DNA of 64,000 nt from Macrostomum lignano (taxonomy: Eukaryota), in assembly GCA_002269645.1 (NCBI GenBank), contig NIVC01002760.1, positions 62,001 through 126,000 of the forward strand, in the 5' to 3' direction. Each line of letters starts with the position of its first letter. Positions within the stretch are counted from its first letter, which is position 1. Below are positions 2,643 through 42,900 of this stretch, piece after piece. The notes under the pieces were generated by a model. The model worked only from the letters and a program-made list of their open reading frames with translations, made no database searches and was not told the DNA's origin. A program made the position numbers and the translations under genes.

Positions 2643-3690
2643 GGACACAGCGGGTCACGGCAAGTCAGGACACAGCGGGTCACGGCAAGTCAGGACACAG
2701 CGGGTCACGGCAAGTCAGGACACAGCGGGTCACGGCAAGTCAGGACACAGCGGGTCACGGCAAGTCAGGACACAGCGGGTCACGGCAAGTCAGGACACAG
2801 CGGGTCACGGCAAGTCAGGACACAGCGGGTCACGGCAAGTCAGGACACAGCGGGTCACGGCAAGTCAGGACACAGCGGGTCACGGCAAGTCAGGACACAG
2901 CGGGTCACGGCAAGTCAGGACACAGCGGGTCACGGCAAGTCAGGACACAGCGGGTCACGGCAAGTCAGGACACAGCGGGTCACGGCAAGTCAGGACACAG
3001 CGGGTCACGGCAAGTCAGGACACAGCGGGTCACGGCAAGTCAGGACACAGCGGGTCACGGCAAGTCAGGACACAGCGGGTCACGGCAAGTCAGGACACAG
3101 CGGGTCACGGCAAGTCAGGACACAGCGGGTCACGGCAAGTCAGGACACAGCGGGTCACGGCAAGTCAGGACACAGCGGGTCACGGCAAGTCAGGACACAG
3201 CGGGTCACGGCAAGTCAGGACACAGCGGGTCACGGCAAGTCAGGACACAGCGGGTCACGGCAAGTCAGGACACAGCGGGTCACGGCAAGTCAGGACACAG
3301 CGGGTCACGGCAAGTCAGGACACAGCGGGTCACGGCAAGTCAGGACACAGCGGGTCACGGCAAGTCAGGACACAGCGGGTCACGGCAAGTCAGGACACAG
3401 CGGGTCACGGCAAGTCAGGACACAGCGGGTCACGGCAAGTCAGGACACAGCGGGTCACGGCAAGTCAGGACACAGCGGGTCACGGCAAGTCAGGACACAG
3501 CGGGTCACGGCAAGTCAGGACACAGCGGGTCACGGCAAGTCAGGACACAGCGGGTCACGGCAAGTCAGGACACAGCGGGTCACGGCAAGTCAGGACACAG
3601 CGGGTCACGGCAAGTCAGGACACAGCGGGTCACGGCAAGTCAGGACACAGCGGGTCACAGCAAGTCAGTACACAGCGGGTCACGGCAAGC
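2643..3690. repeat. Near-perfect 25-bp minisatellite (CAGGACACAGCGGGTCACGGCAAGT)n, ~41 copies
   Basis: Identical copies except the last two. Produces the 25-aa periodic ORFs 2628-3716 and 2635-3726. Confidence 0.97.
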
Positions 3691-6238: not shown

Positions 6239-9200
6239 TCAGAGGTTTTTCCTCAGGAACTCGTGCTCAAGCAACTCCAGTGCGGCTTTTCTCTGCCTGC
6301 GGTCCTTGGCGGTGCAGCGGCTGTAGAAATCCCTCAGCTCTGCGGACCGGCCGTCCGGCAGGGCGGGGGCGCCCCTCCTGTCGATCAGCTGGGCCATTCC
6401 TAACATGCTTTTGGCGTTTGCAAACGGCCTCGCGCCGGAGGCCATCTGGAAGACCGAGCAGCCGAACGCCCAGATGTCCGACTCTCTGCTGTACTGCACG
6501 CTGTCCGACTCTCCCGCTCCGAGCAGCTCTGGTGCCGTGAAGTTCAGAGTGCCTTTGGGTGCCTGAGTGGAGGCTGACATGTGGCTGACTGACTGCTCCA
6601 GCTTGATTGACAGGCCGAAGTCGATCAGCTTGATTCGCGTGTTGTCAGCACAAACAATCATGTTCGAGCAGTTGATGTCTCTGTGGATCACGGGCGGCTG
6701 CCGGCTGTGCAGGTAGAGCAGCGCGCGGCAGATCTGCGAGCGGTCGGTCAGTGAGCAGTCATCATTCATGGGAACATGGAACAGGAGCATCAAGGATGCA
6801 CAATGCTCACCTGCTCGCTGAAGTCTCGAATCGTCAGCTCGTCCAGCGGCTTGTCGATAAACTTCTCCAAGCTTCGGCCGTCCAGCAGCTCCATGAACAC
6901 AACGACTGTAGTGGGCTCCGGCTGAGCGATGTGCAAGAACCTGACGATGTTGGGATGCCGCAGTCGGCACAGGTTTCTCTCGCTCTCGACAGCTCTGTGG
7001 ATCTCTTTGCTCACAGAGGGCAGCTCATCACCGAGCTGCACAGGCAGTCTGAGAGTCTTGGCAGCGCACGTGACGCCCGTGTCAGTTCGAACTTCGTGGA
7101 CTTCGCCGAAGCCTCCGCGGCCGATTAAACGAACGACGTCCCAGCGCTCCAGGAACGGGGGGTCTGAGGGTCTGAGGGGATGCGAATTGAGGCAATGAGG
7201 GATAATTTGCATGGTGTAGCTGTGTGTTGTAGCTGTGTGCTGTAGTTGTGTGCTGTAGCTGTGTGCTGTAGTTGTGTGTGCTGTAGCTGTGTGTGCTGTA
7301 GCTGTGTGTGCTGTAGCTGTGTGCTGTAGCTGTGTGTGCTGTAGCTGTGTGTGCTGTAGCTGTGTGCTGTAGCTGTGTGTGCTGTAGCTGTGTGCTGTAG
7401 TTGTGTGCTGTAGCTGTGTGCTGTAGCTGTGTGTGCTGTAGCTGTGTGTGCTGTAGCTGTGTGTGCTGTAGCTGTGTGCTGTGGCTGTGTGCTGTAGCTG
7501 TGTGTGCTGTAGCTGTGTGTGCTGTAGCTGTGTGTGCTGTGGCTGTGTGCTGTAGCTGTGTGTGCTGTAGCTGTGTGCTGTAGCTGTGTGGGCTGAATAA
7601 ACTCACACCAGTGCCAGAGGCTTGTCGAAGTAAATCTTGTACATGTACATACCCTCTGGTAAATAAGAAGCCCCTGCAGATTAAGCTTTGGGTGGCGCTG
7701 TATGGACATTGGGGGCGCAATCGGGAGATTGCGGCGCCACGAAGAGATTGGAGGCTCTCAAATCATTCAAGTGCCAATATTTTGAACATCACACCAAGTC
7801 AATCCCTAACTAAAATCGGAGAGTTTGAAACTACGGAGAGTTTGATGGCACTTGAACTCGATGATGCTTTGTGTTGAAAACTCCTGCAGATTGAGCTGTG
7901 GGTGGGCGGTTGGGTGCGCCATGGGGAGGTCGGGGGCGCCATGGGGAGATTTGAGACGCCATGAGGAGTTTGGAGGCGCCATGGGGAGGTTGGAGGCGCC
8001 ATGGGGAGGTTGGGGGCGCCATGGGAAGGTTGGGGGCGCCATGAGGAGGTTGGGGGCGCCATGGGGAGGTTGGGAGGCGCCATGAGGAGGTTGGGGGCGC
8101 CATGAGGAGGTTGGGAGGCGCCATGAGGAGGTTGGGAGGCGCCATGAGGAGGTTGGGGGCGCCATGGGGAGGTCGGGGGCGCCATGAGGAGCTTCACTGT
8201 CAGATTCATGACGCCTTCGCTTGACTGCGGCGCTGCTGAGAATTTCAGGGCGCCGATCATTAAAGCGCAATGAATTTTCGCCAAACAATATTTTCAGTAT
8301 TTTCAGTGTCAGGCAGCAGTTCTCAGTCAGGACTCACCCAGCTGAGGCGGCAGTCGGTGCTGAGCTGCCAGCGGGAGGCCGAGAGGCTTCGAGCCGCCGC
8401 TGCGTGGAGGAAATCCAGGCCCGCTTTGCTGACTCGTCTGTGTAGCACCACCGATTCTCAACATAATCAGCCGGTGTTTCGCCCTCGTTGTTCTTCAAGC
8501 TGAACATTTCGGCTCCGATTTGGTCAAAAATGAACTGAAGAGAGTCGACTGGCTGCCACTGAGCGGCCAAATGGACGGCCGTGTTCCCGTATTCGTCAGG
8601 AACTGTGAGACAGTCGTTGCCGAGCTCCTTCACCAGCCACTTCAGATTTGAATTGTCAGACTTCTTAGCAGCAAAGTGAAATGCTGTTCTATCCAACAAT
8701 CCCTTCAGCCGAAAGCAGTCAGTTCCGATCTGTCTCTTGATCCACTCCAGCGACTCGATGCCCTGATGCTCAGCGGCCAAATGGACGGCCGTGTCACCTC
8801 TAGAGTCAGGAACTGTGAGACAGTCGCTGCCGAGCTCATTCACGAGCCACTTCAGATTTGAATTGTCAGACTTCTGAGCAGCAAAGTGAAATGCTGTTCT
8901 ATCCAACAATCCTCCCTTCAGCCGAAAGCAGTCAGTTCCGATCTGTCTCTTGATCAACTCCAGCGACTCGATGCCCTGATGCTCAGCGGCCAAATGGACG
9001 GCCGTGTCACCTCTAGAGTCAGGAACTGTGAGACAGTCGCTGCCGAGCTCATTCACGAGCCACTTCAGATTTGAATTGTCAGACTTCTGAGCAGCAAAGT
9101 GAAATGCTGTTCTATCCAACAATCCTCCCTTCAGCCGAAAGCAGTCAGTTCCGATCTGTCTCTTGATCAACTCCAGCGACTCGATGCCCTGATGCTCAGC

Positions 9201-9761
9201 GGCCAAATGGACGGCCGTGTCATCGCATTGGTCAGGAACTGTGAGACAGTCGCTGCCGAGCTCTTTCACCAGCCACTTCAGACAAGAGTTGCTTTTTCTG
9301 TTCATAGCGGCAAAGTGAGCGACTGTCTTTCCATAATCAGCGGCAATTCTCAAGCAGCCTCTGCCTCCCCTCTCTTTAACCAGCTTCATCCAAGACTCGT
9401 CCTGATGCTGGGCAGCCAAGTGCACTGGAGTCTCACCATAACTTTTATAATTTCCATGTGTCAGACAGTCGGTTCCGAATCTGTCAATCAGCAGCTCCAG
9501 GCACGACGAGCTCACCGGCTTGCAGGCCACGTGATGGGCCAGCGGCATGCGAAGCTCTTCAAAGGGAAAGTCTTGCTTGTCGAAGCCGCCCACCTCCAGC
9601 CAGATGTTGCTGCCGACCTCACCGCACAGTCGCTGCAGCTCCTCGCTGTCTCCAGCCTCCAGCGCCGCTATCAGCTTCCGCTCCATCTCTGTTGCCATGG
9701 CTACACGGCTTCTCCTAGCAGCACTTCTCTGCCGATCTGCTGTCTGCCGCAGCTGTTCCAC
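6239..9761 (-). CDS. Ankyrin-repeat + Ser/Thr protein kinase (STE11/MEKK-like kinase domain), ~759 aa
   Basis: Model join(9761-8338, 7171-6811, 6733-6239). Donors GTGAGT at 8337 and GTGAGC at 6810, acceptors CTCAG and CGCAG, phases 2 and 0 are consistent. Ankyrin motifs ETPVHLAA, DTAVHLAA, RTAFHFAA, ETPADY. Kinase motifs GRGGFGEV, AAK, HPNIV, HRDINCSN, DFG, GTLNFTAPE, DIWAFG. The start could be the second Met (MATEME). Confidence 0.85.
7215..7590. repeat. 13/15-bp minisatellite (TGTAGCTGTGTG[TG]C)n in kinase intron 1
   Basis: Directly visible. Source of the HTQLQ/HSYST repeat ORFs. Confidence 0.93.
7918..8190. repeat. 20/21-bp G-rich minisatellite (GGGGAGGTTGGGGGCGCCAT)n in kinase intron 1
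   Basis: Directly visible. Source of the MAPPTS repeat ORFs. Confidence 0.9.
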
Positions 9762-10329
9762 ACGGCTTCAAACTGAGTGCTTTGCTCTTCTTCAAGCGAA
9801 TTTGCCTGCCAGCTCAGCAGCAGCAGCAAAAGTCCGGCTGTCACGGACTGAAATCTCTGAGCTCTCCCTGTGCAGAGAAATTTGTTTAAATGGATGAGGC
9901 CGATTCTCTTCTCTGACCCAGCGGCTGAGTTTGAGGGCTGAGTGGGTGCCAGGGGGCCCGGCAGCTGCTCTGCTCAGCGGGGTGAGAGATGCAGGAGCAG
10001 TGAGATGCTGCGAGCTCTGCTGAGTTAAACAATGAGAGCTGACTGTGGCTGCGTACTGGGCATAGCAAGTGCATTGTTAGTGGGCAGGGGTGAAGGGGCG
10101 GCAGCTGAGACACGAGGGGAGAGAGATGGAGAGGGAAGGGAGGGCAGGGCTGAGGCCTGGAAACTAAGCGGAGCTCTCTGACGATTTTCAATTTAGTTTG
10201 CAATTTTATGGCAAATATTTTGCAGAAAAATGCTTATGACTGAGGATTTTCTGTTGCTGAACTCGAAAAAGATGGAGAATGGTCGGCTGGGTTTGCCAGC
10301 GACACTTTAAATCAGTATCTAACAGATTA

Positions 10330-11260
10330 CACCAGTATCTAACAGGTACTCGTGACATCAGTATCTAACAGGTGACATCAGTATCTAACAGGTGACATCA
10401 ATATCTAACAGGTGACATCGGTATCTAACAGGTGACATCAGTATCTAACAGGTGACACCAGTATCTAACAGGTACTCGTAACACAAGTATCTAACAGGTA
10501 CTCGTAACATAAGTATCTAACAGGTACTCGTAACATAAGTATCTAACAGGTGACATCAGTATCTAACAGGTGACATCAGTATCTAACAGGTGACATCAAT
10601 ATCTAACAGCTGACATCAGTATCTAAGAGGTGACATCGGTATCTAACAGGTGACATCAGTATCTAACAGGTGACATTAGTATCTAACAGGTGACATCAGT
10701 ATCTAACAGGTGACATTAGTATCTAACAGGGGACACCAGTATCTAACAGGTACTCGTAACATCAGTATCTAACAGGTGACATCAATATCTAACAGCTGAC
10801 ATTTGTATCTAACAGGTGACATCAGTATCTAACAAGTGACACCTGTATCTAACCGGTGACATCAGTATCTAACGGGTGACATCAGTATCTAACAGGTGAC
10901 ATTAGTATCTAACAGGTGACACCAGTATCTAACAGAAGACACCAGTATCTAACAGGTGACATCAGTATCTAACAGGTGACACCAGTATCTAACAGAAGAC
11001 ACCAGTATCTAACAGGTGACACCAGTATCTAACAGGTGACATCAGTATCTTACAGGTGACACCAGTATCTAACAGGTGATATCAGTATCTAACGGGTGAC
11101 ATCAGTATCTAACAAGTGACATCAGTATCTAACAGGTGACATCAGTATCTAACAGGTGACATCAGTATCTAACAAGTGACACCAGTATCTAACAGGTGAC
11201 ATCAGTATCTAACAGGTGACATCAGTATCTAACAGGTGACACCAGTATCTAACGGGTGAC
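10330..11260. repeat. 20-bp minisatellite (CAGTATCTAACAGGTGACAT)n with longer GGTACTCGTAAC variants
   Basis: More than 40 tandem copies visible. Confidence 0.95.
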
Positions 11261-11756
11261 TGTCCCCTGGAGAGACCACGCGTTAGTGCCCAGTCGACGA
11301 AAAATATCGCGCCATTTAACTAATCAATAATTAATTCGCCACTTGAAATCACGATACTTGATTTTCTGATTTAAATTTAGTGAAATTTAATTTCCACGAC
11401 ACGCACAATTTATGCACGAATTTGAAAGTTGGATTAAATTTCCTTGGATTGATGCTTTGAAAAAATTACCTGATCAAAGAAATGATCTATTCAAATTGCT
11501 ATTTTTTAATTGCTTGGTTTAGAGGACTGCTGACTTTAGCCATACAGCCAGGGTGTCCTAGTAGCTTGACTACACGGGCTACTGTGGTATATTTGATTGG
11601 GTAAATATTTCATGTAACATAATATCCGCTAACATCCGCATAGAGAAGCTATTATTTGTAGATGGGCTTATTGAGGAATTAAAGCAAGCTTACGCGCAAA
11701 TATTTAATGTTTTTTTAGCATGTAGATATTATGTCAAACATTTGGAAAGTCTCGCA

Positions 11757-12920
11757 TCAACGCTTGACTTCAAACTTGACGTCTTTGCACCCGTTGGTTG
11801 TTTCGCAAGAGTCTGAAAACGAAAAAAATGTCAGTAAAGATATCTGGATTGTGAAATATTTTATTTGAAACTTTCTATTTGGTAGAGAAGGAACAGCTTC
11901 TTACCAGCAGTGCAGCAGATGCCTCTGGAAGCGCAGCGACCCTTGCCTCCTAGACAGGCAGTGGCGACGCGACCGCAGCCAAGGACTTTCGCTGGCAGAC
12001 GGCGGCACGCGGCGGTGTCCGGGCCGAAGCCGACGCGACATCCGCCGTGGGGGTGACAGCAGATGGCGCGGCCGAAACAGCGGCCCCAGCCGTGGGAGCA
12101 GCTCAGGCAGGGACCGTTATTGGTATTGGTTGCCGGTACATGACTGCCTGCAGGTTTGAAGTTATGGTAGAATTTAAAATACCTGCGTTTGGATTCGGCG
12201 TGCCGTTACATTAATTTGAGGTTCAAGGCCCAGGGCTGGCTGGCCATCTCAAAATGCCCACAGTGTGCATACTGTTGTAGCACAGTGATAGAGCGTCGGA
12301 CTCACGACTTGAAGGTCGGGAGTTCGATTCCCGATCCCACTCGGAACAATTTGTGTCCTTGAGCAAGGACAACTTAACTCTGCATTGCTTCAGTTCGCAA
12401 AGCTGTAAAATGGGTGCCAGCATTAGCTGGGGTAATTGAGGCTGTGTGTGGCGACCCCCCCCCCAGTCCTTGGACTGAACAGCCGTACGCAGTCTTCAGA
12501 TGCGCCGTGCAATAGCTGCGGCTGAGCTGTCGGTTGCACATCTGGCCCAACTGGGGGCAGGTGCAATCATTTATTATTATTATACTGCTTTACACTCAGA
12601 GTGTGTACCTGTGTGGTCAGGTGTCCGTGGAATGGCATTGACTGCTGGACTTCTTGCTGACGGCTGTGGTTATTAAAGCCCCCCCTTCTGATGAGTTGCC
12701 TGTTTGGCTTCAAATTTCTGAAGATTTTTAACGTGACTGCCTGCGACTCACCAATTTCATCAGCTTTCATCGACGCCAATTCAAACTCGTCTATCGAGCG
12801 TTTCTTTTTGCCGCCTGGCGCACAGTTTTCCATGAAACAGGCGCCGCAGCAATGCAACAGGTATGCCAGGCACAGAAGAGCCACGAGCTTGCGTTGAGCT
12901 GTTGTCGTCTTGTAGGCCAT
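11757..12920 (-). CDS. Oxytocin/vasopressin-family prepropeptide: signal peptide + nonapeptide CFMENCAPG-amide + neurophysin, 155 aa
   Basis: join(12920-12752, 12147-11905, 11812-11757) = 169+243+56 = 468 nt, both introns phase 1, GTGAGT/CTGCAG and GTAAGA/TTTCAG. Translation: MAYKTTTAQRKLVALLCLAYLLHCCGA-CFMENCAPG-GKKKR-SIDEFELASMKADEIGSHVPATNTNNGPCLSCSHGWGRCFGRAICCHPHGGCRVGFGPDTAACRRLPAKVLGCGRVATACLGGKGRCASRGICCTADSCETTNGCKDVKFEVKR*. The 14 neurophysin cysteines follow the canonical spacing pattern. A probable 5'UTR intron lies at 12930-13035. Confidence 0.93.
12272..12582 (+). mobile_element. tRNA-derived CORE-SINE, copy 1 (in intron 1 of the oxytocin-like gene)
   Basis: A/B-box head (GGAGTTCGATTCC), MIR/CORE-like TGTGTCCTTGAGCAAGG..ACTTAAC..CTGTAAAATGGG, a 3' body shared with copies 2 and 3, and a TTA-repeat tail. 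Confidence 0.8.
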
Positions 12921-13682
12921 TGTTAGTTTCTGTAAAATAGAACGAGAAGTATTCGATGGTAGCTGATACTATCGAAAAAAGCTATACAGAACTCTTAACG
13001 GTTCCTGGATATTGAAAAGCTGGTAGTCAACTTACCGGTTGCCGGTTCTTGCCCTGTCTTTTATAGACATTTTCAAGCCGCGAGTAGATGGCTTGGGCTT
13101 TGGAGGCGGCGATTTTGTCCCCAATTGGAATAATTATTCCCAACATTTGAAGCTCAAGTTTCATTTGCCCAAATTTGAAATTGGTCCATTTTTCTCATCA
13201 GCAGTTATAAAATTCAGTGAAAGAAGAAAATTGTCGAAACTTTTTGCCCAATTACTGAAGGGGCTCTCGGTAAAAGAAAAAACGCCTCTTACAAAGCCCC
13301 TAACAAATTCTTAGAATAAAAGTTTTCGCCTTTCATCTCACATGTTTATACAATTTATACTTTCGTTGTAATTTCTCGTAAATGAAAACTGTCGTGTTTT
13401 TTATTCTCGTTTGTTTTTTTTTCTTGCCGTAACAAGAAATTTTGTATCGGATAGAAAATATGGACTGGAAAGCAGTTGTTAGTTAGTCTTGAGGGATGCT
13501 TCTGGGTGTAGTGTCACAAAGTCGCTTTTCGCTGGACCCCTGAGCACGCATACGGATTACTTACTCATGCAAAGTGTACGAGTGGCTTTGAACTTTTCAA
13601 CAATAAAGGATTGCCACAACACGCGGAAAAACCTATAAGAACTGTGGAGCAGAGTCGGTCGTGTTAGGGCTCTGTCGATTTG

Positions 13683-15109: not shown

Positions 15110-15322
15110 TTGGGGGTTGTCGAGGATGACAACGTACCGCCACACCAAGCCGATGCTGTTAGTCAACCGAAAGAACAGCTACAGCTGCGCACTCTGCGCT
15201 GGCCTTCCCGGTCACCGGGCATGAATCCCATCGAGCATGTCTGGGACTTCTTAAAACGCAGAATTCGAAAAGAGAATCCACCACAGAATGCTGCGGAGCT
15301 GCGTCATGCCATTGAAAACGCA
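15110..15322 (+). mobile_element. Tc1/mariner DDE transposase relic (C-terminal catalytic part)
   Basis: DDNVPPHQA...WPSRSPGMNPIEHVWDFLKRRIRK..PQNAAELRHAIENA matches the Tc1 QDNAPxH...WPxxSPDLNPIENxW signature. No intact upstream ORF. Confidence 0.85.
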
Positions 15323-15901
15323 TCCCAGATCTCAGATCCCAGATCTCAGATCCCAGATCTCAGATCCCAGATCTCAGATCCCAGATCTCAGATCCCAGAT
15401 CTCAGATCCCAGATCTCAGATCCCAGATCTCAGATCCCAGATCTCAGATCCCAGATCTCAGATCCCAGATCTCAGATCCCAGATCTCAGATCCCAGATCT
15501 CAGATCCCAGATCTCAGATCCCAGATCTCAGATCCCAGATCTCAGATCCCAGATCTCAGATCCCAGATCTCAGATCCCAGATCTCAGATCCCAGATCTCA
15601 GATCCCAGATCTCAGATCCCAGATCTCAGATCCCAGATCTCAGATCCCAGATCTCAGATCCCAGATCTCAGATCCCAGATCTCAGATCCCAGATCTCAGA
15701 TCCCAGATCTCAGATCCCAGATCTCAGATCCCAGATCTCAGATCCCAGATCTCAGATCCCAGATCTCAGATCCCAGATCTCAGATCCCAGATCTCAGATC
15801 CCAGATCTCAGATCCCAGATCTCAGATCCCAGATCTCAGATCCCAGATCTCAGATCCCAGATCTCAGATCCCAGATCTCAGATCCCAGATCTCAGATCCC
15901 A
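15323..15901. repeat. Perfect 14-bp tandem array (CCCAGATCTCAGAT)n, ~41 copies
   Basis: Directly visible. Begins exactly where transposase similarity stops. Confidence 0.97.
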
Positions 15902-16803: not shown

Positions 16804-17105
16804 TGGTTGTAGCCTAGTGGTTGGAGCTTCGGATTCACGACGATTCCAGATCCCACTGGAACAATTTGTGTCTTTGAGCAAGACACTTAGTTTAGCTAGC
16901 TCTGCATTGCTTCAGTTCACCCAGCTGTAAAATGGGTGCCAGCATTAGCTGGGGTAATGTTAGTTGTTTTGAGTGGCGACCCCCCAGTCCTTGGACTGAA
17001 CAGCCGTACGCAGTCTTCAGATGCGCCGCACAATAGCTGCGGCTGAGCTGTCGGTTAAGCACATGCATCTGGCCCAACTTGGGGCAGGTGTAATAAATAA
17101 TAACA
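16804..17105 (+). mobile_element. tRNA-derived CORE-SINE, copy 2
   Basis: TGTAGCCTAGTGGTTGGAGC head, GGAACAATTTGTGTCTTTGAGCAAGACACTTAG, CTGTAAAATGGGTGCCAGCATTAGCTGGGG and GTCCTTGGACTGAACAGCCGTACGCAG all match copy 1. Confidence 0.8.
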
Positions 17106-21001: not shown

Positions 21002-24000
21002 TTAACCCGCAACCCCACCAGCAGCAAAAGGAAGGCAAAGGCGGCGGGTTGGCAGCGAGCACAAAGCAGCGACGAGGTGGGGAAGGCGACCCCTTCGGAT
21101 GTTGCACTTATTTTGAGCAATACACGGGCGTACGTCGAATTCGAAATTGATCGATAAAACCGGGGAGAATAAAACAAGAGAAATTAAAAAAAATAAAAAA
21201 TCTGAGCAATTGCACACAGACGGTCAAGCCAGAAAATACTGGGTTTAAGAACCCTCGGCACGCGGCGGAGGGGGGGGCGGAGGAGAGGTGGGCAAAGGGG
21301 GTGGGGTGGGGTTAACACACTTTACACTGAGGCCCACGGAGCAGGCCTAGTGTAAAGTAGACATTAACTCGCAACCCCACAAGCAGCAAAAGGAAGGCAA
21401 AGGCGGCGGGTTGGCAGTGAGCACAAAGCAGCGACGACGTGGGGAAGGCGACCCCAACCCCGAAAAAAGAAGAAGCGGGGGAAGTTAGTGATAATTAATA
21501 GAAGCAGCAATCTGCTGGACGGCGGAGCGCCTGCGGGCAAAAGCTGCATCGTCCGAGAAATAGCGGAAGACGGGGGTCGGAGCGCCAGTCACCAAGGCAG
21601 CGGATGTCGGCCACGGAGAGGCCACCCTGGAAGGCGGCGCTGGCTCCGCCCCTGCGCAGACTGTGGCCAGAGAAGTTTTCCTCAGCAGGGATGCCGCAGA
21701 TCGACAGGCCCCGCTTGAGCAGGCGGATGAAGTTCGAGGCAGCCAACGGGACTCTGCGGGCGCCCAGGACAGCGAAGAGAGGCTGGTGCGGCTCGACAAC
21801 TTGGTTCTCACGCAGATGAGTGGCGAGGGCAGAGACCGGGCAGATCGGTGGGCAGTCGGTGCATTGCGGAAGGAACACCAGCAGCTGACGCTCCTTGAAC
21901 TGGTTCGTCTTGGACTTGCCGATGGTCAGGCGGAGGCCACCGGGGCAGGTCGACAGCACACCGCGGCGCAAAGCAGCGCCAGCAGTAGACGGAAGACGCT
22001 CGCCCAGACGAAGGACGCCCCACAAGGCAACCAGCAGCGCAGCCTTGAAGGCCACGAAGAGGCGCCGCGGGGCAGCAATTGCTGAAGCAGAGGGCTGTTG
22101 CAGAGCAGGCGGAGATGATGCGGCTGCAGTGGCTCTGCCCTGCGTGGCTTTCTGCTTAGTAGATCTCACGGGAGAGGCAGTCCTTCAGCAAATCCCTGGT
22201 GCTGGCGGCCTTGTCCATGGGCAGCGACAGTGTTCCGTCATTTGTGTCGATTTGAACGCCGAGGAAGACCATCCGCTGCGTTGGGGCCGTGGACTTGCTC
22301 CAGTTGATGGTGAAGCCCACTGGCAGGAGGTGCACCAGGTAGTCGTAAGCGCATTCAGAGGCTTCATGTGAGTCGCCGGCAACTACCCAGTCGTCCAGGT
22401 AGTTGACCGTAGCTTGGAAGCCTTGCCTAAGCATGTGGCGATGAATGGCGGCTGAGAGACGGTGAAAGATCCCGCAAGAGACCCGGGCACCGAATGGCAG
22501 CCGGGCGTCGATGAACACCGAGGATTCGGTGTCAGCTGTGCAACGCCAGCTGATGCCTGTCAACGCCTGATCGTCCGGGTGGATGCCGACAGAGCGGTAG
22601 GCCTGCTTCAGATCGACCTTGCCGATAAACGAGCCGGGCCGGATGTGACGCAGCAGATCCTGCACGGAGAATCTCAGACTCCGCTCCTGCTCATAGCTGT
22701 CGTTGACCGAAGAGCCGGAAGGACTGGACAGATCGTGAATTATCCGAACGCTGCCATCAGACTTAGGGATCGCGCCGATAGCATTCACCATGACGCGTCC
22801 GCTAGCGGGTTTTAAGCGGCCAAGGCGGAGCTCTTCGGAGAGTTGCTTGTCAATCTGCTCGGCATGGTCAGTAGCAGAACGGTAGTTGGAAGAATGCGTG
22901 GAGGCAGGCGGAGGCTTGTTGATGAGGCGGAAGCCGTTATAAAGGCCTTTTCGGAGGAATCTCGTCTGGGTCGTTACGTAGCAGAAGATTCCAAGAAGCC
23001 AAGTTCATGTCAGAAGACAGCACCCGATGCGGCGGGGGAGGCGGGTCGGGTTGGCGGGCAGGGGTGAGGGGATGCAAGCAATGGAATGGGGGCGGGCGGG
23101 GGATAAAAGCATGGTGGCTATAAAATAAATCTAGTTTTTTTACCCCTCTGCCGCATCGCTGCTCTGACGATGCAGTTGGGCGGGATGCGGCTTGCCGCAG
23201 CCAGGCAGCTTGCAGACGTGCCGGTACCTGCAGCTGGACCGTTGACAGCCAGCTGTTAAGTTGAAGCTCAGGCAAACGGGCGCCTGCGGCTGCGAGATAC
23301 CTTCAGATTGCGTAGAGCGTTCAGGTGTCGATGGTACAGCTGCGGGGGTTCGCACCCCCACTGATGCAATTCTGACTCGGCCATCAGCTTCCTGTAGTCT
23401 TCATCGAACTCCCACACAACGTTTGGGCTGTAGTTGGCGTCCAGGAGTTCCCCGATCTTCTGGGAGTACAGCAGGTAGCCTCTCAGCTCGCTGGTGTTCA
23501 CAGACCCGTCGTCATTCAGATAGATGAGCGAGCCGTCGTCAATCAGGCGCTGTAGGATTTGAGCATTTCCATAGACCACGCAGGTGGTCAGGCTCTCGCT
23601 TGACTGATTGGCGTTGGGCTTGACAAAGTCTCGGATCAGGTAGGCCCGGCTGCGCTTTCTGGCCGACTGACCGCTCTCTACACCTGCGCAAGATAAAAAG
23701 GCCTCATGCACACCAGCAGGAAAAGCTGTAGGCTCACCTTGAGAGGAGGTAGCAGTCTAACTGATTCCCGTTGAGCTCGCGCTGCAGTTAAGCACGGCGC
23801 TGCGTCAGCGCCTTGATTTCCAGCTCTTCGACCTCCTTCCGCAGAGCCGCCAGGTCGCCAGCCGCGCCCCCCCGTCGCCTCTTGCCCGCCTGTTGACTGG
23901 TCGTCGATGATTCCTGCATCAAGAGTCGAGCCGGAGCTGTCATAGTCGGCTGCAGGAGCTTCAGACTGCAAGTGGCGGCATAGCCGTTCGTAGAGCTGAT

Positions 24001-31300: not shown

Positions 31301-33566
31301 TTATAAGTCCCTAGGGTTAGGGACTATGATGGGATAAGGACTGTGGGAGCTAAATTTAAGAAGATTGAAACTATATGCATATTGAGATTGAAATGAGGGG
31401 GGTTAAGTTTAAGATAAATGTTTTTACTTTCAATATAAAAGTTAAAATAAGCACGTTGTGGCTAGGATGGTAAGGGCTTAAGTTAAGATGAATGAAGCCA
31501 ATGGGGAAGCCACCTAGCATTTGCCACTATCAAAGGCTAGATTGCAAAGGAGTCTTCTTGGAAACCAATTGATGAGTTAGGCCATCACCCTCACAGAATA
31601 TTTTGCATAGTAGTAATTGGAAATTTTGTTAATTGAGTTACTTGAACAATATATGAAAATATTTCAGGAGAGAGATGAGAGGTAGAAAAGAGAGAGTCAA
31701 AGAAGGGGAAAATAAAAGATGATCTTGTCATTTGCCCTTGGCCTGCAGCTTGAGCAATATTTATTGTTCAAGCTATTGTTCAAGCTAGATATTTGCATAG
31801 CAGAAGGCATCTGACCAGATAACATGGCTAGTCAGTTGAAGTTGTTGCCTGCATAGCAGGTCAGGCCACATCAGGCGCACCCTTGTGTAGAGCACAGCTA
31901 ATAAAGTATATTGAGTCTTATTAACCATTATAAGGTGCATAAAATTCTTCTAAAAACCGTAAGCAAACAAGTTGCTATTTACCATAATTAAAAACATTTA
32001 TATTAGTATATGTTTGTATGTATATTAAATCCTTTTGAAGTTGTATACTTTAGAGAAATAATATGGAAACCTTTATATATTTATCCTTAGAAATACTTAT
32101 AATTGTTTATTGTTCAATAGTTAAATGGCAAAGAATGCAACCAACTTACACACAACACACATATTTAGAGCTGCTTGCTGGCGCAGACCTGAACGATCTC
32201 ACAGTGAAGAAGGTGCGCAAAGAGCTTGAGCAGCGACTCGGAGTCAGCCTAGCAGATAGGAAGACTGATATTGAACAGGCAATCGAGGCTGTACTGACAG
32301 CCCGCGGCAACAGTGCTAGCAACCAAGATGAAGCTAAAAGCAGCAATAGCGGCAATGAAGATAAACATGATGATGATGATGACACAGACTCCAGCTTATC
32401 CGAACTAGAAGACGCTGCTCCATCAAGGAAATCGGCAAAATTGTCTTCAGCTTCATCCGCTGCAGCAGCTTCGTCTTCTGCTTCTGCAAAAAAGAAGCAG
32501 AAAGCTCAGACAGACGAAGAATTGGCCAGGGAGTTGCACCTGAAAGAGAATGGCTTAACAACCCGTCGGCGCAGGACTGTCGGCTCAAGCGGTGATTCTT
32601 CCGCTACTAAAAGCAGAAAAGCGCCAAGAAAATCTGGCGGCGGATTCTCCAAGCCGTGCGCGTTGAGTCCCGCATTGGCCAGCGTTGTTGGCTGCGACTC
32701 TATGCCCAGACAGCAGGTGGGTGCAAGCATTGTGGCAGCCACATTTAGAGACTGGCGTTTGGCGAGGCAATTCCAAATCAGCACTCTGAAAGGCACTCTC
32801 TATTGTTGTCACTGTATGGGCACATAAATGCATATTCAATTTTTTAAAATAAAAGTCTAAACTTTATTGTGACTCTACTTTGACAAACCTTTCACTCCAA
32901 AAGTCACAAACCTGTCACTCTAAAAGTTACGAATCTGTCACTCTAAACGTCTCAAACCTGTCACTCTAAATACCACAAACCTGTCACTAAAAGACACCAA
33001 CCTGTCACTAAAAGTCACAAACCTGTCACTCTAAAAGTCACGAATCTGTCACTCTAAACGTCTCAAACCTGTCACTCTAAATGCCAAAAACCTGTCACTA
33101 AAAGTCATCAACCTGTCACTCTAAAAGTCACAAACCTGTCACTTTAAAAGACAAACCTGTCACTCTAAACGTCACAGAATGTCACTAAAAAAGTCACAAA
33201 CCTGTCACTTTAAAAGTCAAACCTGTCACTCTAAACGTCACAGAACTGTCACTTGAAAAGTCACAAATCTGTCACTCTAAAAGTCACGGATCTGTCAGTC
33301 CTAAAGTCACATTGCTTTTCACTTTGTAAGCACTCTTGCAAGCCCAATGAGAGTCACTCCACTAGTAGCACTCCATTAAATTCTCCTTCATCACGCAGGT
33401 GGTGAAGCGCCTGTGGGACATCGCCAAAGAGCGCGAAATGTTCGACCCGAAGAACAAGCAGTTTGTGATTTGCGACGCGGAATTTGAGCAACTGTTTGGC
33501 AAAAAGCGACTTCGGATGTTCGCTCTGATGAAGTATCTGAAGAATCATGTTAAAAATGTGGACTAA
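25356..33566 (+). CDS. DEK-C + SWIB/MDM2 domain protein (UAF30/Spp27-like), 250 aa
   Basis: join(25356-25392, 32169-32716, 33399-33566) = 753 nt, phases 1 and 0 consistent. N-terminus MVENSVLHEEVTKLLAGADLNDLTVKKVRKELEQRLG (DEK-C). SWIB part GGFSKPCALSPALASVVG..MPRQQ|VVKRLWDIAKEREMFDPKNKQFVICDAEFEQLFG. Confidence 0.88.
32895..33310. repeat. ~21-23-bp degenerate minisatellite (AAACCTGTCACTCTAAAAGTCAC)n in intron 2 of the SWIB gene
   Basis: Directly visible. Confidence 0.88.
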
Positions 33567-39900: not shown

Positions 39901-42900
39901 GTCCGATGAATAAAAATCGCCCCTTGATTGAAAATCGCCCCATGATAAATAACCGCCTATAGAAAATAAAAATCGCTAATGATGGAAAATCGCCCTAAAT
40001 GAACAAGAAGTAACCCCATGATTAAAAATCCAGCTTTCAAAAAGCAGTCAGTAAAAAACCATTAATTAAACCTTTAAAAAGTCACATTTCCCTCGAAAGA
40101 GTTTCCCCCACAAAAAATTCCCTTTTAAAATTGACATTTAAAAATTATATTTCAATCATCTGCGCAGTTTTTTGAAAATTGCGGCAAACTTTAACCTAGT
40201 TTCAACTTTTTAAGTACATGTATTACGAGCTATGTAAATTTCTTTGGTATGCAGACAGAAGGAAGGGATTGTGGTTTCTGGTTGTCATGGAAACGCCAAA
40301 AAACATTAGGACTGGGTTATATACTAAAAGTACTATAATTTTCGAACCGGGTGGTGCCTCCAGTCAATCATTGAGATAAGAATACAGCATGCATGTGGAG
40401 GAGACTAAACTACAGTAGAGGAACAAGCACGCAAGTGCATAGAGAGTCAATCCATCATGCATGCCAGTCTGCATCCGAAATGCAATATGCAAATACATGC
40501 GTGCCCTGTTCTAATTTTTTCAGCATTATTGCCTACTGCCTTGAGTTTCTTTGCTTCTATCTAAATTGAAGATGCACAGTTATAGCCTCGCTGGCTTTGT
40601 GTCTTCTATAGTTTTACTTTCGGTGTACACTTATTTTTGAAAGTAAATTTAATGCTAGTAGTAGGCTTTTACTACTTTTGTTTTTTTATTTGGAAATGCA
40701 AAGAGATCTAGGTGGGACGAAAGATAAATAAAGGGATAGAGAGAGCAGTAGAGGAAGGGAGAGAGAGGGGTAGAGGGGTAGAGGAAGGGAGAGAGCTGAG
40801 AAAGAGGGGTAGAGGAAGGGAGAGAGTGGAGAAAGAGGAGTAGAGGAAGGGAGAGAGTGGAGAAAGAGGAGTAGAGGAAGGGAGAGAGTGGAGAAAGAGG
40901 AGTAGAGGAAGGGAGAGAGAGGAGAGAGCGGTAGAGGAAGGGAGAGAGCGGAGAGAGGGGTAGAGGAAGGGAGAGAGCGGAGAAAGAGGGGTAGAGGAAG
41001 GGAGAGAGTGGAGAAAGAGGAGTAGAGGAAGGGAGAGAGTGGAGAAAGAGTGGTAGAAGTAAGGAAAGAGCGGAGAGGGGTAGGTGTATGGAGAGAGTGG
41101 AGAGAGGGGTAGAGGAAGGGAGAGAGCGGAGAAAGAGGGGTAGAGGAAGGGAGAGAGTGGAGAAAGAGGAGTAGAGGAAGGGAGAGAGTGGAGAAAGAGT
41201 GGTAGAAGTAAGGAAAGAGCGGAGAGGGGTAGGTGTATGGAGAGAGTGGAGAGAGGGGTAGAGGAAGGGAGAGAGCGGAGAAAGAGGGGTAGAGGAAGGG
41301 AGAGAGTGGAGAAAGAGTGGTAGAAGTAAGGAAAGAGCGGAGAGGGGTAGGTGTAGGGAGAGAGTGGAGAGAGAGAGCGGTAGAGGAAGGGAGAGAGCGG
41401 AGAGAGGGGTAGAGGAAGGGAGAGAGCGGAGAAAGAGGGGTAGAGGAAGGGAGAGAGTGGAGAAAGAGGAGTAGAGGAAGGGAGAGAGTGGAGAAAGAGG
41501 AGTAGAGGAAGGGAGAGAGTGGAGAAAGAGGGGTAGAGGAAGGGAGAGAGCGGAGAAAGAGGGGTAGAGGAAGGGAGAGAGTGGAGAAAGAGTGGTAGAA
41601 GTAAGGAAAGAGCGGAGAGGGGTAGGTGTAGGGAGAGAGTGGAGAGAGAGAGCGGTAGAGGAAGGGAGAGAGCGGAGAGAGGTGTAGAGGAAGGGAGAGA
41701 GCGGAGAAAGAGGGGTAGAGGAAGGGAGAGAGTGGAGAAAGAGTGGTAGAAGTAAGGAAAGAGCGGAGAGGGGTAGGTGTAGGGAGAGAGTGGAGAAAGA
41801 GGAGTAGAGGAAGGGAGAGAGTGGAGAAAGAGGGGTAGAGGAAGGGAGAGAGCGGAGAAAGAGGGGTAGAGGAAGGGAGAGAGTGGAGAAAGAGTGGTAG
41901 AAGTAAGGAAAGAGCGGAGAGGGGTAGGTGTAGGGAGAGAGTGGAGAGAGAGAGCGGTAGAGGAAGGGAGAGAGCGGAGAGAGGTGTAGAGGAAGGGAGA
42001 GAGCGGAGAAAGAGGGGTACAGGAAGGGAGAGAGTGGAGAAAGAGGAGTAGAGGAAGGGAGAGAGTGGAGAAAGAGGAGTAGAGGAAGGGAGAGAGTGGA
42101 GAAAGAGGAGTAGAGGAAGGGAGAGAGTGGAGAAAGAGGAGTAGAGGAAGGGAGAGAGTGGAGAAAGAGGAGTAGAGGAAGGGAGAGAGTGGAGAAAGAG
42201 GAGTAGAGGAAGGGAGAGAGTGGAGAAAGAGGAGTAGAGGAAGGGAGAGAGTGGAGAAAGAGGAGTAGAGGAAGGGAGAGAGTGGAGAAAGAGGGGTAGA
42301 GGAAGGGAGAGAGCTGAGAAAGAGGGGTAGAGGAAGGGAGAGAGTGGAGAAAGAAGAGTAGAGGAAGGGAGAGAGTGGAGAAAGAGGAGTAGAGGAAGGG
42401 AGAGAGTGGAGAAAGAGGAGTAGAGGAAGGGAGAGAGAGGAGAGAGCGGTAGAGGAAGGGAGAGAGCGGAAAGAGGGGTAGAGGAAGGGAGAGAGCGGAG
42501 AAAGAGGGGTAGAGGAAGGGAGAGAGTGGAGAAAGAGGAGTAGAGGAAGGGAGAGAGTGGAGAAAGAGTGGTAGAAGTAAGGAAAGAGCGGAGAGGGGTA
42601 GGTGTATGGAGAGAGTGGAGAGAGGGGTAGAGGAAGGGAGAGAGCGGAGAAGAGGGGTAGAGGAAGGGAGAGAGCGGAGAAAGGGGGGTAGAGGAAGGGA
42701 GAGAGTGGAGAAAGAGGAGTAGAGGAAGGGAGAGAGTGGAGAAAGAGGAGTAGAGGAAGGGAGAGAGTGGAGAAAGAGGAGTAGAGGAAGGGAGAGAGTG
42801 GAGAAAGAGGAGTAGAGGAAGGGAGAGAGTGGAGAAAGAGGAGTAGAGGAAGGGAGAGAGTGGAGAAAGAGGAGTAGAGGAAGGGAGAGAGAGGAGAGAG

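What the first reader, a model, noticed from the sequence alone, without database searches (positions are those of the whole stretch)
11757..12920. Hidden oxytocin/vasopressin-type neuropeptide gene with an unusual nonapeptide (CFMENCAPG-NH2)
Manual splicing yields a complete precursor: signal peptide, C-x4-C-x2-G nonapeptide, Gly amide donor plus KKKR, and a 14-Cys neurophysin. The second intron falls just after the last CC pair, as in vertebrate OXT/AVP genes. The ORF track shows only exon 1 read into its intron, so automated annotation could miss the gene. The peptide departs from the family consensus: the near-invariant Pro7 is Ala, Pro sits at position 8, and positions 3-4 are Met-Glu. 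VP/OT signalling was long considered absent from flatworms; from memory, it has since been reported as platytocin in some free-living species. I cannot tell whether this sequence variant is already described.
Basis: partly seen in the sequence, partly recalled or inferred. Interest (0 to 1): 0.85.

Follow-up and report, generated by a model that had tools for sequence, protein, structure and literature searches.

The report
Second vasopressin/oxytocin-type gene in a flatworm

Summary
On the minus strand, exons 12920-12752, 12147-11905 and 11812-11757 join through GT..AG introns into a 155-aa precursor. It has a signal peptide, CFMENCAPG, a Gly amide donor, KKKR, a spacer and a 14-Cys neurophysin (Pfam Hormone_5 52.2 bits, cut-off 27.2).

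The organism is Macrostomum lignano. UniProt fragment A0A1I8I2P0 is identical to the exon 2-3 product.

VP/OT-type genes are already published for this species (Kobayashi 2022). Three of the four accessions cited there belong to a different gene, Mlig003431. That gene encodes CFVANCPPG and is about 34% identical to this one. It has the same three-exon layout, and both introns have the same phase.

The window gene belongs to the Mlig008727 family. Every database protein found for that family lacks exon 1. They are 98-aa fragments named "GRANULINS/EB domain", plus the chimeric PAA80927.1, whose locus has lost exon 1 through a 665-bp deletion. The string CFMENCAPG appears in no searchable paper.

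Divergent features are Ala7 (precedent: Saccoglossus CFISDCARG), Glu4, a long spacer, and Leu in place of the hormone-binding Glu47 of neurophysin. Expression, processing and receptor are untested.

Verdict: a real gene, a new member of a known family, of moderate interest.

The parts
13058..13065 (-). TATAAAAG, a candidate TATA box 138 nt upstream of the ATG (inferred only)
   Evidence: Read from the sequence. No transcript data.
12921..12932 (-). End of a pyrimidine-rich ...TTTTACAG acceptor followed by AAACTAACA before the ATG. It could be a 5'UTR cis-splice or SL trans-splice acceptor (speculative). The start context is AAACTAACAATGG.
   Evidence: Sequence reading only.
12840..12920 (-). 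Signal peptide, residues 1-27 (MAYKTTTAQRKLVALLCLAYLLHCCGA). It has a basic n-region, a hydrophobic core at residues 12-22, and Cys at -3 and Ala at -1.
   Evidence: Hydropathy reaches about 2.7 over residues 12-20. In all aligned precursors the hormone Cys1 follows the leader directly. No SignalP was available.
12813..12839 (-). Predicted nonapeptide CFMENCAPG (residues 28-36), with a Cys1-Cys6 ring
   Evidence: C28, C33 and G37-K38 are invariant, and N32 and G36 at least 90% conserved, among 15 VP/OT precursors. Position 34 is Pro in all the others and Ala here.
12798..12812 (-). Gly37 amide donor plus the KKKR prohormone-convertase site
   Evidence: It aligns with GGKR/GGKKR of the other precursors.
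12752..12920 (-). Coding exon 1 (169 nt). The donor is G|GTGAGT, phase 1, splitting Gly57.
   Evidence: The paralog Mlig003431 also has a phase-1 intron splitting a Gly codon after the hormone.
12148..12751 (-). Intron 1 (604 nt). It holds a dispersed repeat of about 250 bp (about 12289-12567), with two more copies in the window.
11905..12147 (-). Coding exon 2 (243 nt): the end of the spacer and most of the neurophysin
   Evidence: UniProt A0A1I8I2P0 (98 aa) is identical to the exon 2+3 product, and PAA80927.1 uses the homologous acceptor.
11813..11904 (-). Intron 2 (92 nt), phase 1, splitting Asp138 just after the last CC pair (..ICCTA|D|SC..)
   Evidence: Mlig003431 has the same codon and phase (..VCCDL|D|SC..). 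By alignment the site corresponds to the bovine neurophysin residue 76/77 boundary.
11757..11812 (-). Coding exon 3 (56 nt including the TGA stop): the last two neurophysin Cys and the tail ..KFEVKR
11784..12109 (-). Neurophysin domain, residues 70-147, 14 Cys (interrupted by intron 2)
   Evidence: Pfam Hormone_5 52.2 bits; PDB neurophysins; fold matches; all Cys columns invariant.
11703..11708 (-). ATTAAA, a candidate polyadenylation signal about 50 nt after the stop (inferred)

Best explanation
This is a genuine, structurally intact vasopressin/oxytocin-type neuropeptide precursor gene of Macrostomum lignano. It is a second, highly divergent paralog (family Mlig008727) beside the published Mlig003431 'oxytocin' gene.

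Inferred mechanism, by homology:
1. The 155-aa prepro-protein enters the secretory pathway and signal peptidase cuts after Ala27.
2. Cys28 and Cys33 form the six-residue ring.
3. A prohormone convertase cuts at KKKR, carboxypeptidase trims the basic residues, and PAM converts Gly37 into the C-terminal amide. The product is cyclic CFMENCAPG-NH2 (calculated monoisotopic mass 967.335).
4. The 14-Cys neurophysin acts as the folding and packaging carrier in dense-core vesicles.
5. The peptide is then released to act on a G-protein-coupled receptor that is still unidentified.

Shown here: the exon structure, the domain homology, the identity of the organism, and the distinctness from the published paralog. 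Inferred: splicing in vivo, processing, secretion and receptor signalling.

The carrier's hormone pocket looks remodelled. Leu107 replaces the Glu47 that salt-bridges the hormone's amino terminus in bovine neurophysin, and the loop is basic (CRRLPAKVLGC). The peptide has gained an acidic Glu4 and lost Pro7. Hormone and carrier may therefore have co-diverged.
For: - Exact in-frame GT..AG model.
- Hormone_5 above the Pfam threshold, PDB neurophysin matches, and neurophysin-only fold matches.
- An exhaustive HMMER search returns only canonical VP/OT precursors, with alignments running from the signal peptide to the end of the neurophysin.
- All hormone-ring and neurophysin Cys are invariant in the alignments, as are the amide-donor Gly37 and the first basic residue Lys38.
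- Exon 1 alone aligns with exon 1 of Mlig003431: HCCGACFMENCAPGGKKK against HLCELCFVANCPPGGKKR, E 8e-8.
- The annotated paralog has the same three coding exons, with both introns in phase 1 and in the same codons, Gly and Asp.
- The exon 2 and 3 boundaries are confirmed independently by A0A1I8I2P0 (100% identical) and PAA80927.1.
- All 14 Cys are kept in the five sequence variants of the family. Window against L001 shows 5 synonymous and 5 non-synonymous codon differences over 72 and 222 sites, a dN/dS of roughly 0.35.
- Platytocin, the polyclad homologue, is an experimentally shown secreted and active hormone (PMC8896804).
Against:
- No second copy of exon 1 was available, so its conservation is untested.
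- Exon identity between the window and L001 (96-97%) is no higher than that of the 3' part of intron 1, so the signal for selection is weak.
- At least one family copy is 5'-truncated, and a copy of the other paralog is degenerate (P0037). Decay therefore does occur in these families.
- The neurophysin lacks the Glu47 equivalent.
- Kobayashi et al. found no clear VP/OT receptor ortholog in M. lignano.
Confidence: 0.8

Rival explanations
1. A decaying or silent paralog. The reading frame is still open, but the gene is no longer expressed or processed as a hormone. In that case Ala7, Glu4 and the loss of the Glu47 equivalent would reflect relaxed constraint after duplication in a repeat-rich, recently duplicated genome.
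For: - The sister copy in L001 has lost exon 1 and the promoter-proximal sequence.
- Exon and intron identities between the copies are similar.
- The gene sits on a long unsupported branch in the NJ tree.
- No protein or transcript-derived sequence with exon 1 was found in a collection of 15 billion proteins.
- No receptor has been reported in this species.
Against: - The 468-nt frame is intact and all four splice sites are canonical.
- Every Cys and the processing motif G-KKKR are retained.
- The synonymous to non-synonymous ratio leans towards purifying selection.
- TATA-like and ATTAAA signals are in place.
Confidence: 0.14
2. Nothing new: this is the M. lignano VP/OT precursor already reported by Kobayashi et al. 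2022, with the peptide already known.
For: The paper states that VP/vasotocin precursor genes exist in M. lignano and lists four accessions.
Against: - PAA50340.1 and PAA85176.1 and PAA46766.1 are Mlig003431 copies encoding CFVANCPPG, 34% identical to the window protein.
- No database protein carries the window's N-terminus.
- 'CFMENCAPG' occurs in no paper of the library.
Confidence: 0.04
3. A gene-model artefact: exon 1 is a chance ORF or a relic that is not joined to the neurophysin exons. The real product would then start elsewhere, as in PAA80927.1.
For: The only GenBank model of the family (PAA80927.1) joins exon 2 to an exon 10 kb upstream with no hormone.
Against: - That upstream exon has no counterpart in the window and no signal peptide, and its locus has exon 1 deleted.
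- The window's exon 1 is homologous to the hormone exon of Mlig003431.
- It splices in frame with the same phase as in that gene.
- The motif is expected 0.06 times per window by chance.
Confidence: 0.02

Closest known systems
Macrostomum lignano Mlig003431 'Oxytocin' precursors (PAA50340.1/PAA63765.1, PAA85176.1, PAA46766.1; UniProt A0A1I8HHA6), the genes cited by Kobayashi et al. 2022
   Same: - Same species and same precursor architecture.
- Three coding exons, with both introns in phase 1 and in the same Gly and Asp codons.
- A shared His/Cys-containing end of the signal peptide, GGKK(K)R, and Gly-Arg instead of Gly-Pro before the first CC pair.
   Different: - Only about 34% identity.
- The peptide is CFVANCPPG (Pro7) against CFMENCAPG.
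- The spacer is 9 aa against 28 aa.
- The locus and neighbours differ: TMEM117 there, an Ank-kinase gene here.
- The NJ tree does not group the two genes.
Platytocin precursor of polyclad flatworms (Stylochoplana pusilla BCO16375.1, Notocomplana humilis BCO16377.1)
   Same: A flatworm VP/OT-type precursor with signal peptide, nonapeptide, GKKR and a 14-Cys neurophysin. Platytocin is experimentally shown to be secreted and active (PMC8896804).
   Different: Platytocin is CFIRNCPPG. Identity is 30-33%. The polyclad neurophysin keeps the CxxE Glu, and a cognate receptor is known in polyclads but not in M. lignano.
Saccoglossus kowalevskii VP/OT-type peptide CFISDCARG-NH2
   Same: It is the one described family member with Ala instead of Pro at position 7 (PMC7181382).
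   Different: It is from a deuterostome, so the change is independent. Positions 3-5 and 8 differ (ISD..R against MEN..P).
Vertebrate vasopressin/oxytocin-neurophysin genes (bovine NP-I/NP-II structures 1NPO, 1L5C, 2BN2)
   Same: - The neurophysin fold and its 14 Cys.
- A three-exon organisation, with the second intron at the equivalent of neurophysin residue 76/77. This rests on the alignment plus textbook knowledge that exon B encodes residues 10-76.
   Different: - There is no copeptin.
- Intron 1 lies 12-13 residues further upstream, inside a longer spacer.
- The Glu47 equivalent is Leu.
- The peptide does not match Pfam Hormone_4. Validated invertebrate precursors do not match it either.
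Database entries for the same gene family: PAA80927.1 (BOX15_Mlig008727g1, 'hypothetical protein'), UniProt A0A1I8I2P0, A0A1I8IKP1, A0A1I8I0Z5 ('EB/GRANULINS domain-containing')
   Same: They are 95-100% identical to the exon 2-3 product.
   Different: None contains the signal peptide or the hormone. PAA80927.1 comes from a copy with exon 1 deleted and carries an unrelated 76-aa N-terminus.

Membership tests
VP/OT-neurophysin precursor family | Neurophysin domain with 14 conserved cysteines (Pfam PF00184 Hormone_5) | tested here: met
   52.2 bits against the curated cut-off of 27.2, covering model positions 3-79 of 79. All Cys columns are invariant. PDB neurophysins match at E 4e-7. All 10 fold matches are neurophysins, although the model has only pLDDT 59.6.
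VP/OT-neurophysin precursor family | Hormone placed directly after the signal peptide, with a Cys1-x4-Cys6 ring, a hydrophobic or aromatic residue 2, Asn/Asp5 and Gly9 | tested here: met
   CFMENCAPG at residues 28-36. C28 and C33 are invariant, and N32 and G36 at least 90% conserved. The leader has signal-peptide features. The cleavage site is inferred, not predicted by a dedicated tool.
VP/OT-neurophysin precursor family | Pro at hormone position 7 (near-invariant, not universal) | tested here: not met
   Ala34. The other 14 aligned precursors all have Pro. There is a precedent for Ala7 in Saccoglossus, so this is not disqualifying.
VP/OT-neurophysin precursor family | Gly amide donor followed by a dibasic cleavage site | tested here: met
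   G37-KKKR. G37 and K38 are invariant columns.
VP/OT-neurophysin precursor family | Three coding exons, with the second intron just after the last CC pair of the neurophysin | tested here: met
   Phase-1 intron in Asp138 after ICCTA. The annotated M. lignano paralog has the identical codon and phase. The site aligns to bovine NP 76/77. The vertebrate exon limits come from established knowledge and were not tested here.
VP/OT-neurophysin precursor family | Hormone-binding Glu of the neurophysin (bovine Glu47, the CxxE motif) | tested here: not met
   Leu107 in CRRLPAKVLGC. Most aligned precursors have Glu. The role of Glu47 is from established knowledge of the 1NPO complex.
VP/OT-neurophysin precursor family | Pfam PF00220 Hormone_4 match to the nonapeptide | tested here: inconclusive
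   No hit at E <= 10. The controls platytocin, cephalotocin, tardigrade conopressin and Mlig003431 do not hit either. Only a CYIQNCPRG-type precursor does.
VP/OT-neurophysin precursor family | Spliced mRNA, neuronal expression and a mature amidated cyclic peptide | not testable with these tools
   No M. lignano transcript or peptidome data could be reached. Supplement searches for Mlig008727 found nothing.
VP/OT-neurophysin precursor family | Cognate VP/OT-type GPCR in the same genome | not testable with these tools
   Kobayashi et al. report no clear ortholog in M. lignano. The GPCR exon at window 52435-54069 resembles opioid and somatostatin-type receptors, not OXTR or V1/V2.
Platytocin orthologue (the flatworm VP/OT gene as published) | Groups with polyclad platytocin or Mlig003431 in a phylogeny, or is one of the accessions cited for M. 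lignano | tested here: not met
   The traced accessions are the other paralog. In the NJ tree the window gene is an isolated long branch with no supported partner. PAA87831.1 remains untraced.

The most novel reading that the evidence does not exclude
M. lignano has a neofunctionalised VP/OT-like hormone and carrier pair. The peptide (Glu4, Ala7) and its neurophysin (loss of the Glu47 salt-bridge partner, a basic loop) have co-evolved a new mode of binding. The peptide signals through a non-canonical receptor in an animal that reportedly lacks a recognisable VP/OT receptor. That would make it a natural experiment in how hormone, carrier and receptor are re-matched.
Probability: 0.15. Interest if true: 0.7.

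Novelty: new member of a known kind. Interest (0 to 1): 0.42.

Why it matters
VP/OT signalling was long thought lost in flatworms (review of 2020). It was recovered in 2022 with platytocin and one M. lignano gene family.

A second, strongly divergent paralog in the main macrostomid model species adds three things:
- Flatworms join cephalopods, nematodes and tardigrades as invertebrate lineages with duplicated VP/OT genes.
- It provides a rare natural Pro7-to-Ala, Glu4 variant, together with a neurophysin that lacks the canonical hormone-anchoring Glu.
- It sharpens the open question of what receptor these peptides use in M. lignano.

On the practical side, gene sets for this genome should be corrected. 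The family is currently labelled "GRANULINS/EB domain" or "hypothetical", and its hormone exon is missing.

Tried and rejected
1. A search with the N-terminal 73 aa against the 5.8-billion-cluster protein collection found nothing. The word index seems imperfect, because P0001 shares four 5-mers with the query and was still not listed. A full-length match would nevertheless have shared more than 50 words.
P0001 is not on record. I therefore could not fetch the window's own record or other copies that carry exon 1.
3. A literature search for the peptide string and the gene IDs gave no hits. Supplement searches in four papers for the gene IDs, the species name or the peptide strings gave no hits.
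4. Pfam Hormone_4 as a membership test was rejected as uninformative after controls.
5. An NJ phylogeny meant to place the paralog was unresolved: the gene is a long branch at distance 0.62-0.72 from everything.
6. The AlphaFold model has mean pLDDT 59.6 and the hormone segment is below 50. That is too poor to judge hormone docking.
7. tRNA and Rfam scans of the window and Pfam scans of the plus-strand ORFs under the gene found nothing, so there is no competing feature on the other strand.
8. I considered whether the GPCR exon 40 kb away could be the receptor. Its best solved relatives are opioid and somatostatin receptors, so nothing links it to VP/OT.

Full report
**1. What is in the sequence**

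The ATG is at 12920. Exon 1 ends at 12752 with the donor G|GTGAGT. Exon 2 runs 12147-11905, after ...CCTGCAG and with the donor G|GTAAGA. Exon 3 runs 11812-11757, after ...TTTTCAG, and ends in TGA. The exons are 169, 243 and 56 nt long. They give a 468-nt frame and a 155-aa protein, and both introns are in phase 1.

The protein reads as follows:
- Signal-like leader MAYKTTTAQRKLVALLCLAYLLHCCGA, with a basic n-region, a hydrophobic core of mean hydropathy about 2.7, and Cys at -3 and Ala at -1.
- Nonapeptide CFMENCAPG.
- Gly, then KKKR.
- A 28-residue spacer.
- A 78-residue domain with 14 Cys.
- The tail DVKFEVKR.

A TATAAAAG lies at 13065-13058 and an ATTAAA at 11708-11703. Both are only read from the sequence. 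Nothing competes on the plus strand: no Pfam hit in its ORFs, no Rfam family and no tRNA. A nonapeptide-type motif occurs once in the six-frame translation, against 0.06 per shuffled window.

**2. Is it a neurophysin precursor?**

Yes.
- Pfam Hormone_5 scores 52.2 bits against a curated cut-off of 27.2 and covers almost the whole model.
- The score is similar to that of the other M. lignano gene (54.8) and lower than platytocin (68.6).
- Bovine neurophysins I and II are the only PDB sequence matches, at E 4e-7.
- An AlphaFold model built on 17 sequences is only moderately confident, with pLDDT 59.6 overall and 75-80 in the N-terminal half of the domain. All ten of its Foldseek matches in the PDB are neurophysins, with probability 0.84-0.99.
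- An exhaustive HMMER search of 1.84 billion representatives returned 20 proteins. Every one whose sequence I read is a VP/OT-type precursor, and several alignments run from the signal peptide to the end of the neurophysin.
- In multiple alignments the two hormone Cys, the amide-donor Gly, the first basic residue and all neurophysin Cys are invariant.
- Pfam Hormone_4 does not hit. It also fails on platytocin, cephalotocin and the other controls, and recognises only a CYIQNCPRG-type precursor. That test therefore says nothing.

**3. Whose gene is it, and is it already known?**

The best database match is a cluster of four Macrostomum lignano proteins. UniProt A0A1I8I2P0 (98 aa, "EB domain-containing") is identical to the exon 2+3 product. 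This fixes the species and independently confirms the exon 2 and 3 boundaries and intron 2. A0A1I8IKP1 and A0A1I8I0Z5 ("GRANULINS domain-containing") are 95% variants that also start at exon 2.

The only GenBank member is PAA80927.1 (BOX15_Mlig008727g1, 174 aa). It has an unrelated, non-secretory 76-aa N-terminus joined at the same exon 2 acceptor. I fetched its locus as L001. It is homologous to the window from 11454 to 12302 and again over 12968-13021. The 665 bp between these stretches, which hold the ATG, the whole of exon 1 and 449 bp of intron 1, are missing. No nonapeptide motif exists anywhere in its 30 kb. That copy is therefore 5'-truncated.

No protein in the collection shares the window's N-terminal 73 residues.

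Kobayashi et al. 2022 (PMC8896804) named platytocin in polyclads. They state that VP/vasotocin precursor genes also exist in M. lignano, listing PAA85176.1, PAA50340.1, PAA46766.1 and PAA87831.1, and that no clear receptor ortholog was found there. I could trace three of the four accessions. All three are copies of another gene, Mlig003431, named "Oxytocin" in UniProt, with the peptide CFVANCPPG. That gene is 34% identical to the window protein. PAA87831.1 could not be traced and is the one residual doubt about novelty.

The strings CFMENCAPG, Mlig008727 and Mlig003431 occur in no paper of the library.

**4. Independent support for the exon 1 join**

- Exon 1 alone aligns with the hormone exon of Mlig003431: HCCGACFMENCAPGGKKK against HLCELCFVANCPPGGKKR, E 8e-8.
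- I reconstructed the annotated structure of Mlig003431 at two loci (L002, L003). It has three coding exons. Intron 1 is in phase 1 inside a Gly codon after the cleavage site. Intron 2 is in phase 1 inside the Asp codon of ..CCDL|D|SC...
- The window gene has the same phases, in Gly57 and in the Asp138 of ..CCTA|D|SC...
- In the alignment with bovine neurophysin II, that Asp is the residue aligned with Glu77. This is the classical exon B/C boundary (residues 76/77) of vertebrate genes, according to plus established knowledge.

**5. How far it departs from the family**

- Position 7 is Ala where all 14 other aligned precursors have Pro. The only described precedent I found is Saccoglossus CFISDCARG-NH2, noted as unusual in the 2020 review.
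- Pro8 is not unusual. Platytocin is CFIRNCPPG and many protostome peptides are CFITNCPPG.
- Glu at position 4 and Met at position 3 are not seen in the aligned set.
- The spacer before the first neurophysin Cys is 28 residues, against about 7-15 in most precursors.
- In the neurophysin, the loop between Cys 7 and Cys 8 is CRRLPAKVLGC, where most precursors have CxxE.... Leu107 aligns with bovine Glu47. From established knowledge of the neurophysin-oxytocin complex and of the delta-Glu47 diabetes insipidus mutation, Glu47 anchors the hormone's alpha-amino group.
- The peptide has gained an acidic residue and the loop has become basic, so co-divergence of hormone and carrier is a reasonable hypothesis. 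It is only an inference.
- In an NJ tree the gene is an isolated long branch, at distances of 0.62-0.72 to every other precursor including the other M. lignano gene. The age of the duplication is unresolved.
- Shared oddities hint at a common flatworm or macrostomid origin: Gly-Arg instead of Gly-Pro before the first CC pair, GGKK(K)R, and His/Cys at the end of the leader.

**6. Functional or decaying?**

For function:
- The frame is intact.
- All four splice sites are canonical.
- All processing motifs and all Cys are kept, including in five sequence variants of exons 2-3.
- There are 5 synonymous against 5 non-synonymous codon differences to the L001 copy, over 72 and 222 sites, which gives a dN/dS of roughly 0.35.

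Against function:
- The numbers are small, and exon identity (96-97%) is no higher than that of the adjoining intron.
- One family copy is truncated, and one copy of the other paralog is degenerate (P0037).
- I could obtain no expression evidence.

I put 0.8 on a functional hormone gene and about 0.14 on a silent or decaying copy. The remainder goes to "already described" or "model artefact".

**7. Mechanism**

By homology with vertebrate and platytocin precursors, the steps are:
1. Co-translational signal cleavage after Ala27.
2. Cys1-Cys6 disulfide formation.
3. Convertase cleavage at KKKR.
4. Carboxypeptidase trimming.
5. Amidation from Gly37, giving cyclic CFMENCAPG-NH2 (monoisotopic mass 967.335).
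6. Packaging with the neurophysin in dense-core vesicles, release, and action on a GPCR.

All of these steps are inferred, none is shown. The receptor is unknown. The literature reports no canonical VP/OT receptor in this species.

**8. Verdict**

The thing is a new, divergent member of a well-known family, in a phylum and species where the family has already been reported. Its hormone exon has been missed by the protein sets I could query. The interest is moderate (0.42): useful for neuropeptide evolution and for fixing the annotation, but not a surprise of principle.

Noticed in passing
window 52435-54069 (+): A 544-aa open frame encodes most of a rhodopsin-family GPCR (Pfam 7tm_1 61 bits, also 7TM_GPCR_Srw), with ERA in place of DRY and NFIIY in place of NPxxY. 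Its best solved relatives are kappa, delta and mu opioid receptors and somatostatin receptors (E 1e-8 to 1e-4). No oxytocin or vasopressin receptor is among the top 60. It is a peptide-type orphan receptor about 40 kb from the hormone gene, and the proximity is probably coincidental.
   Followed up: partly
L001 19972-20832 (NIVC01000558.1), against window 11454-13021: A paralogous or homeologous copy of the gene has a clean 665-bp deletion that removes the ATG, exon 1 and 449 bp of intron 1, and homology to the window stops 100 bp upstream of the ATG. GenBank annotates this truncated copy as PAA80927.1 by joining exon 2 to an exon 10 kb upstream that has no signal peptide.
   Followed up: yes
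window 12289-12567, 16841-17094, 48457-48701: A dispersed repeat of about 250 bp, at 76-85% identity, sits inside intron 1 and occurs twice more in the window. One end has a tRNA T-arm-like GGGAGTTCGATTCCC on the plus strand, which suggests a SINE, but ARAGORN calls no tRNA. The 3' breakpoint of the L001 deletion lies at its edge.
   Followed up: partly
window 6239-9761 (-): An ankyrin-repeat plus Ser/Thr protein-kinase gene lies directly downstream of the hormone gene on the same strand (Ank_2 117 bits, Pkinase 108 bits). It contains a 213-bp in-frame tandem repeat at 8562-9282. Ank and kinase genes also flank the paralog in L001.
   Followed up: partly
window-wide, e.g. 55-525, 721-1562, 2643-3689, 10311-11260, 15322-15901, 40748-43936: More than 25 minisatellite arrays with periods of 4-213 bp and up to 3.2 kb in length. 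Many create long spurious ORFs in several frames, for example the 1146-aa frame at 40655-44095. Several arrays are shared with L001.
   Followed up: no
window 15110-15300 (+), 21495-22791 (-): Transposon remnants: the C-terminal end of a DDE_3 (Tc1/mariner-type) transposase running into a 14-bp satellite, and a reverse-transcriptase fragment (RVT_1 47.7 bits) with an adjacent ORF.
   Followed up: no
P0037 = PAA46766.1 (Mlig003431g4), not in the window: This copy of the published M. lignano VP/OT gene has a scrambled stretch (..ADEMRGLSRPADLSAQSAAVHFGARRRC..) that lacks two neurophysin cysteines. It is likely a frameshifted or degenerate copy, although it is one of the accessions cited as a VP/OT precursor.
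   Followed up: no
window 32063-32827 (+), 47266-48099 (-): Exon-sized ORFs with a DEK C-terminal domain (46 bits) and a CFAP65 Ig-like domain (46.6 bits). These are further host genes, not examined.
   Followed up: no
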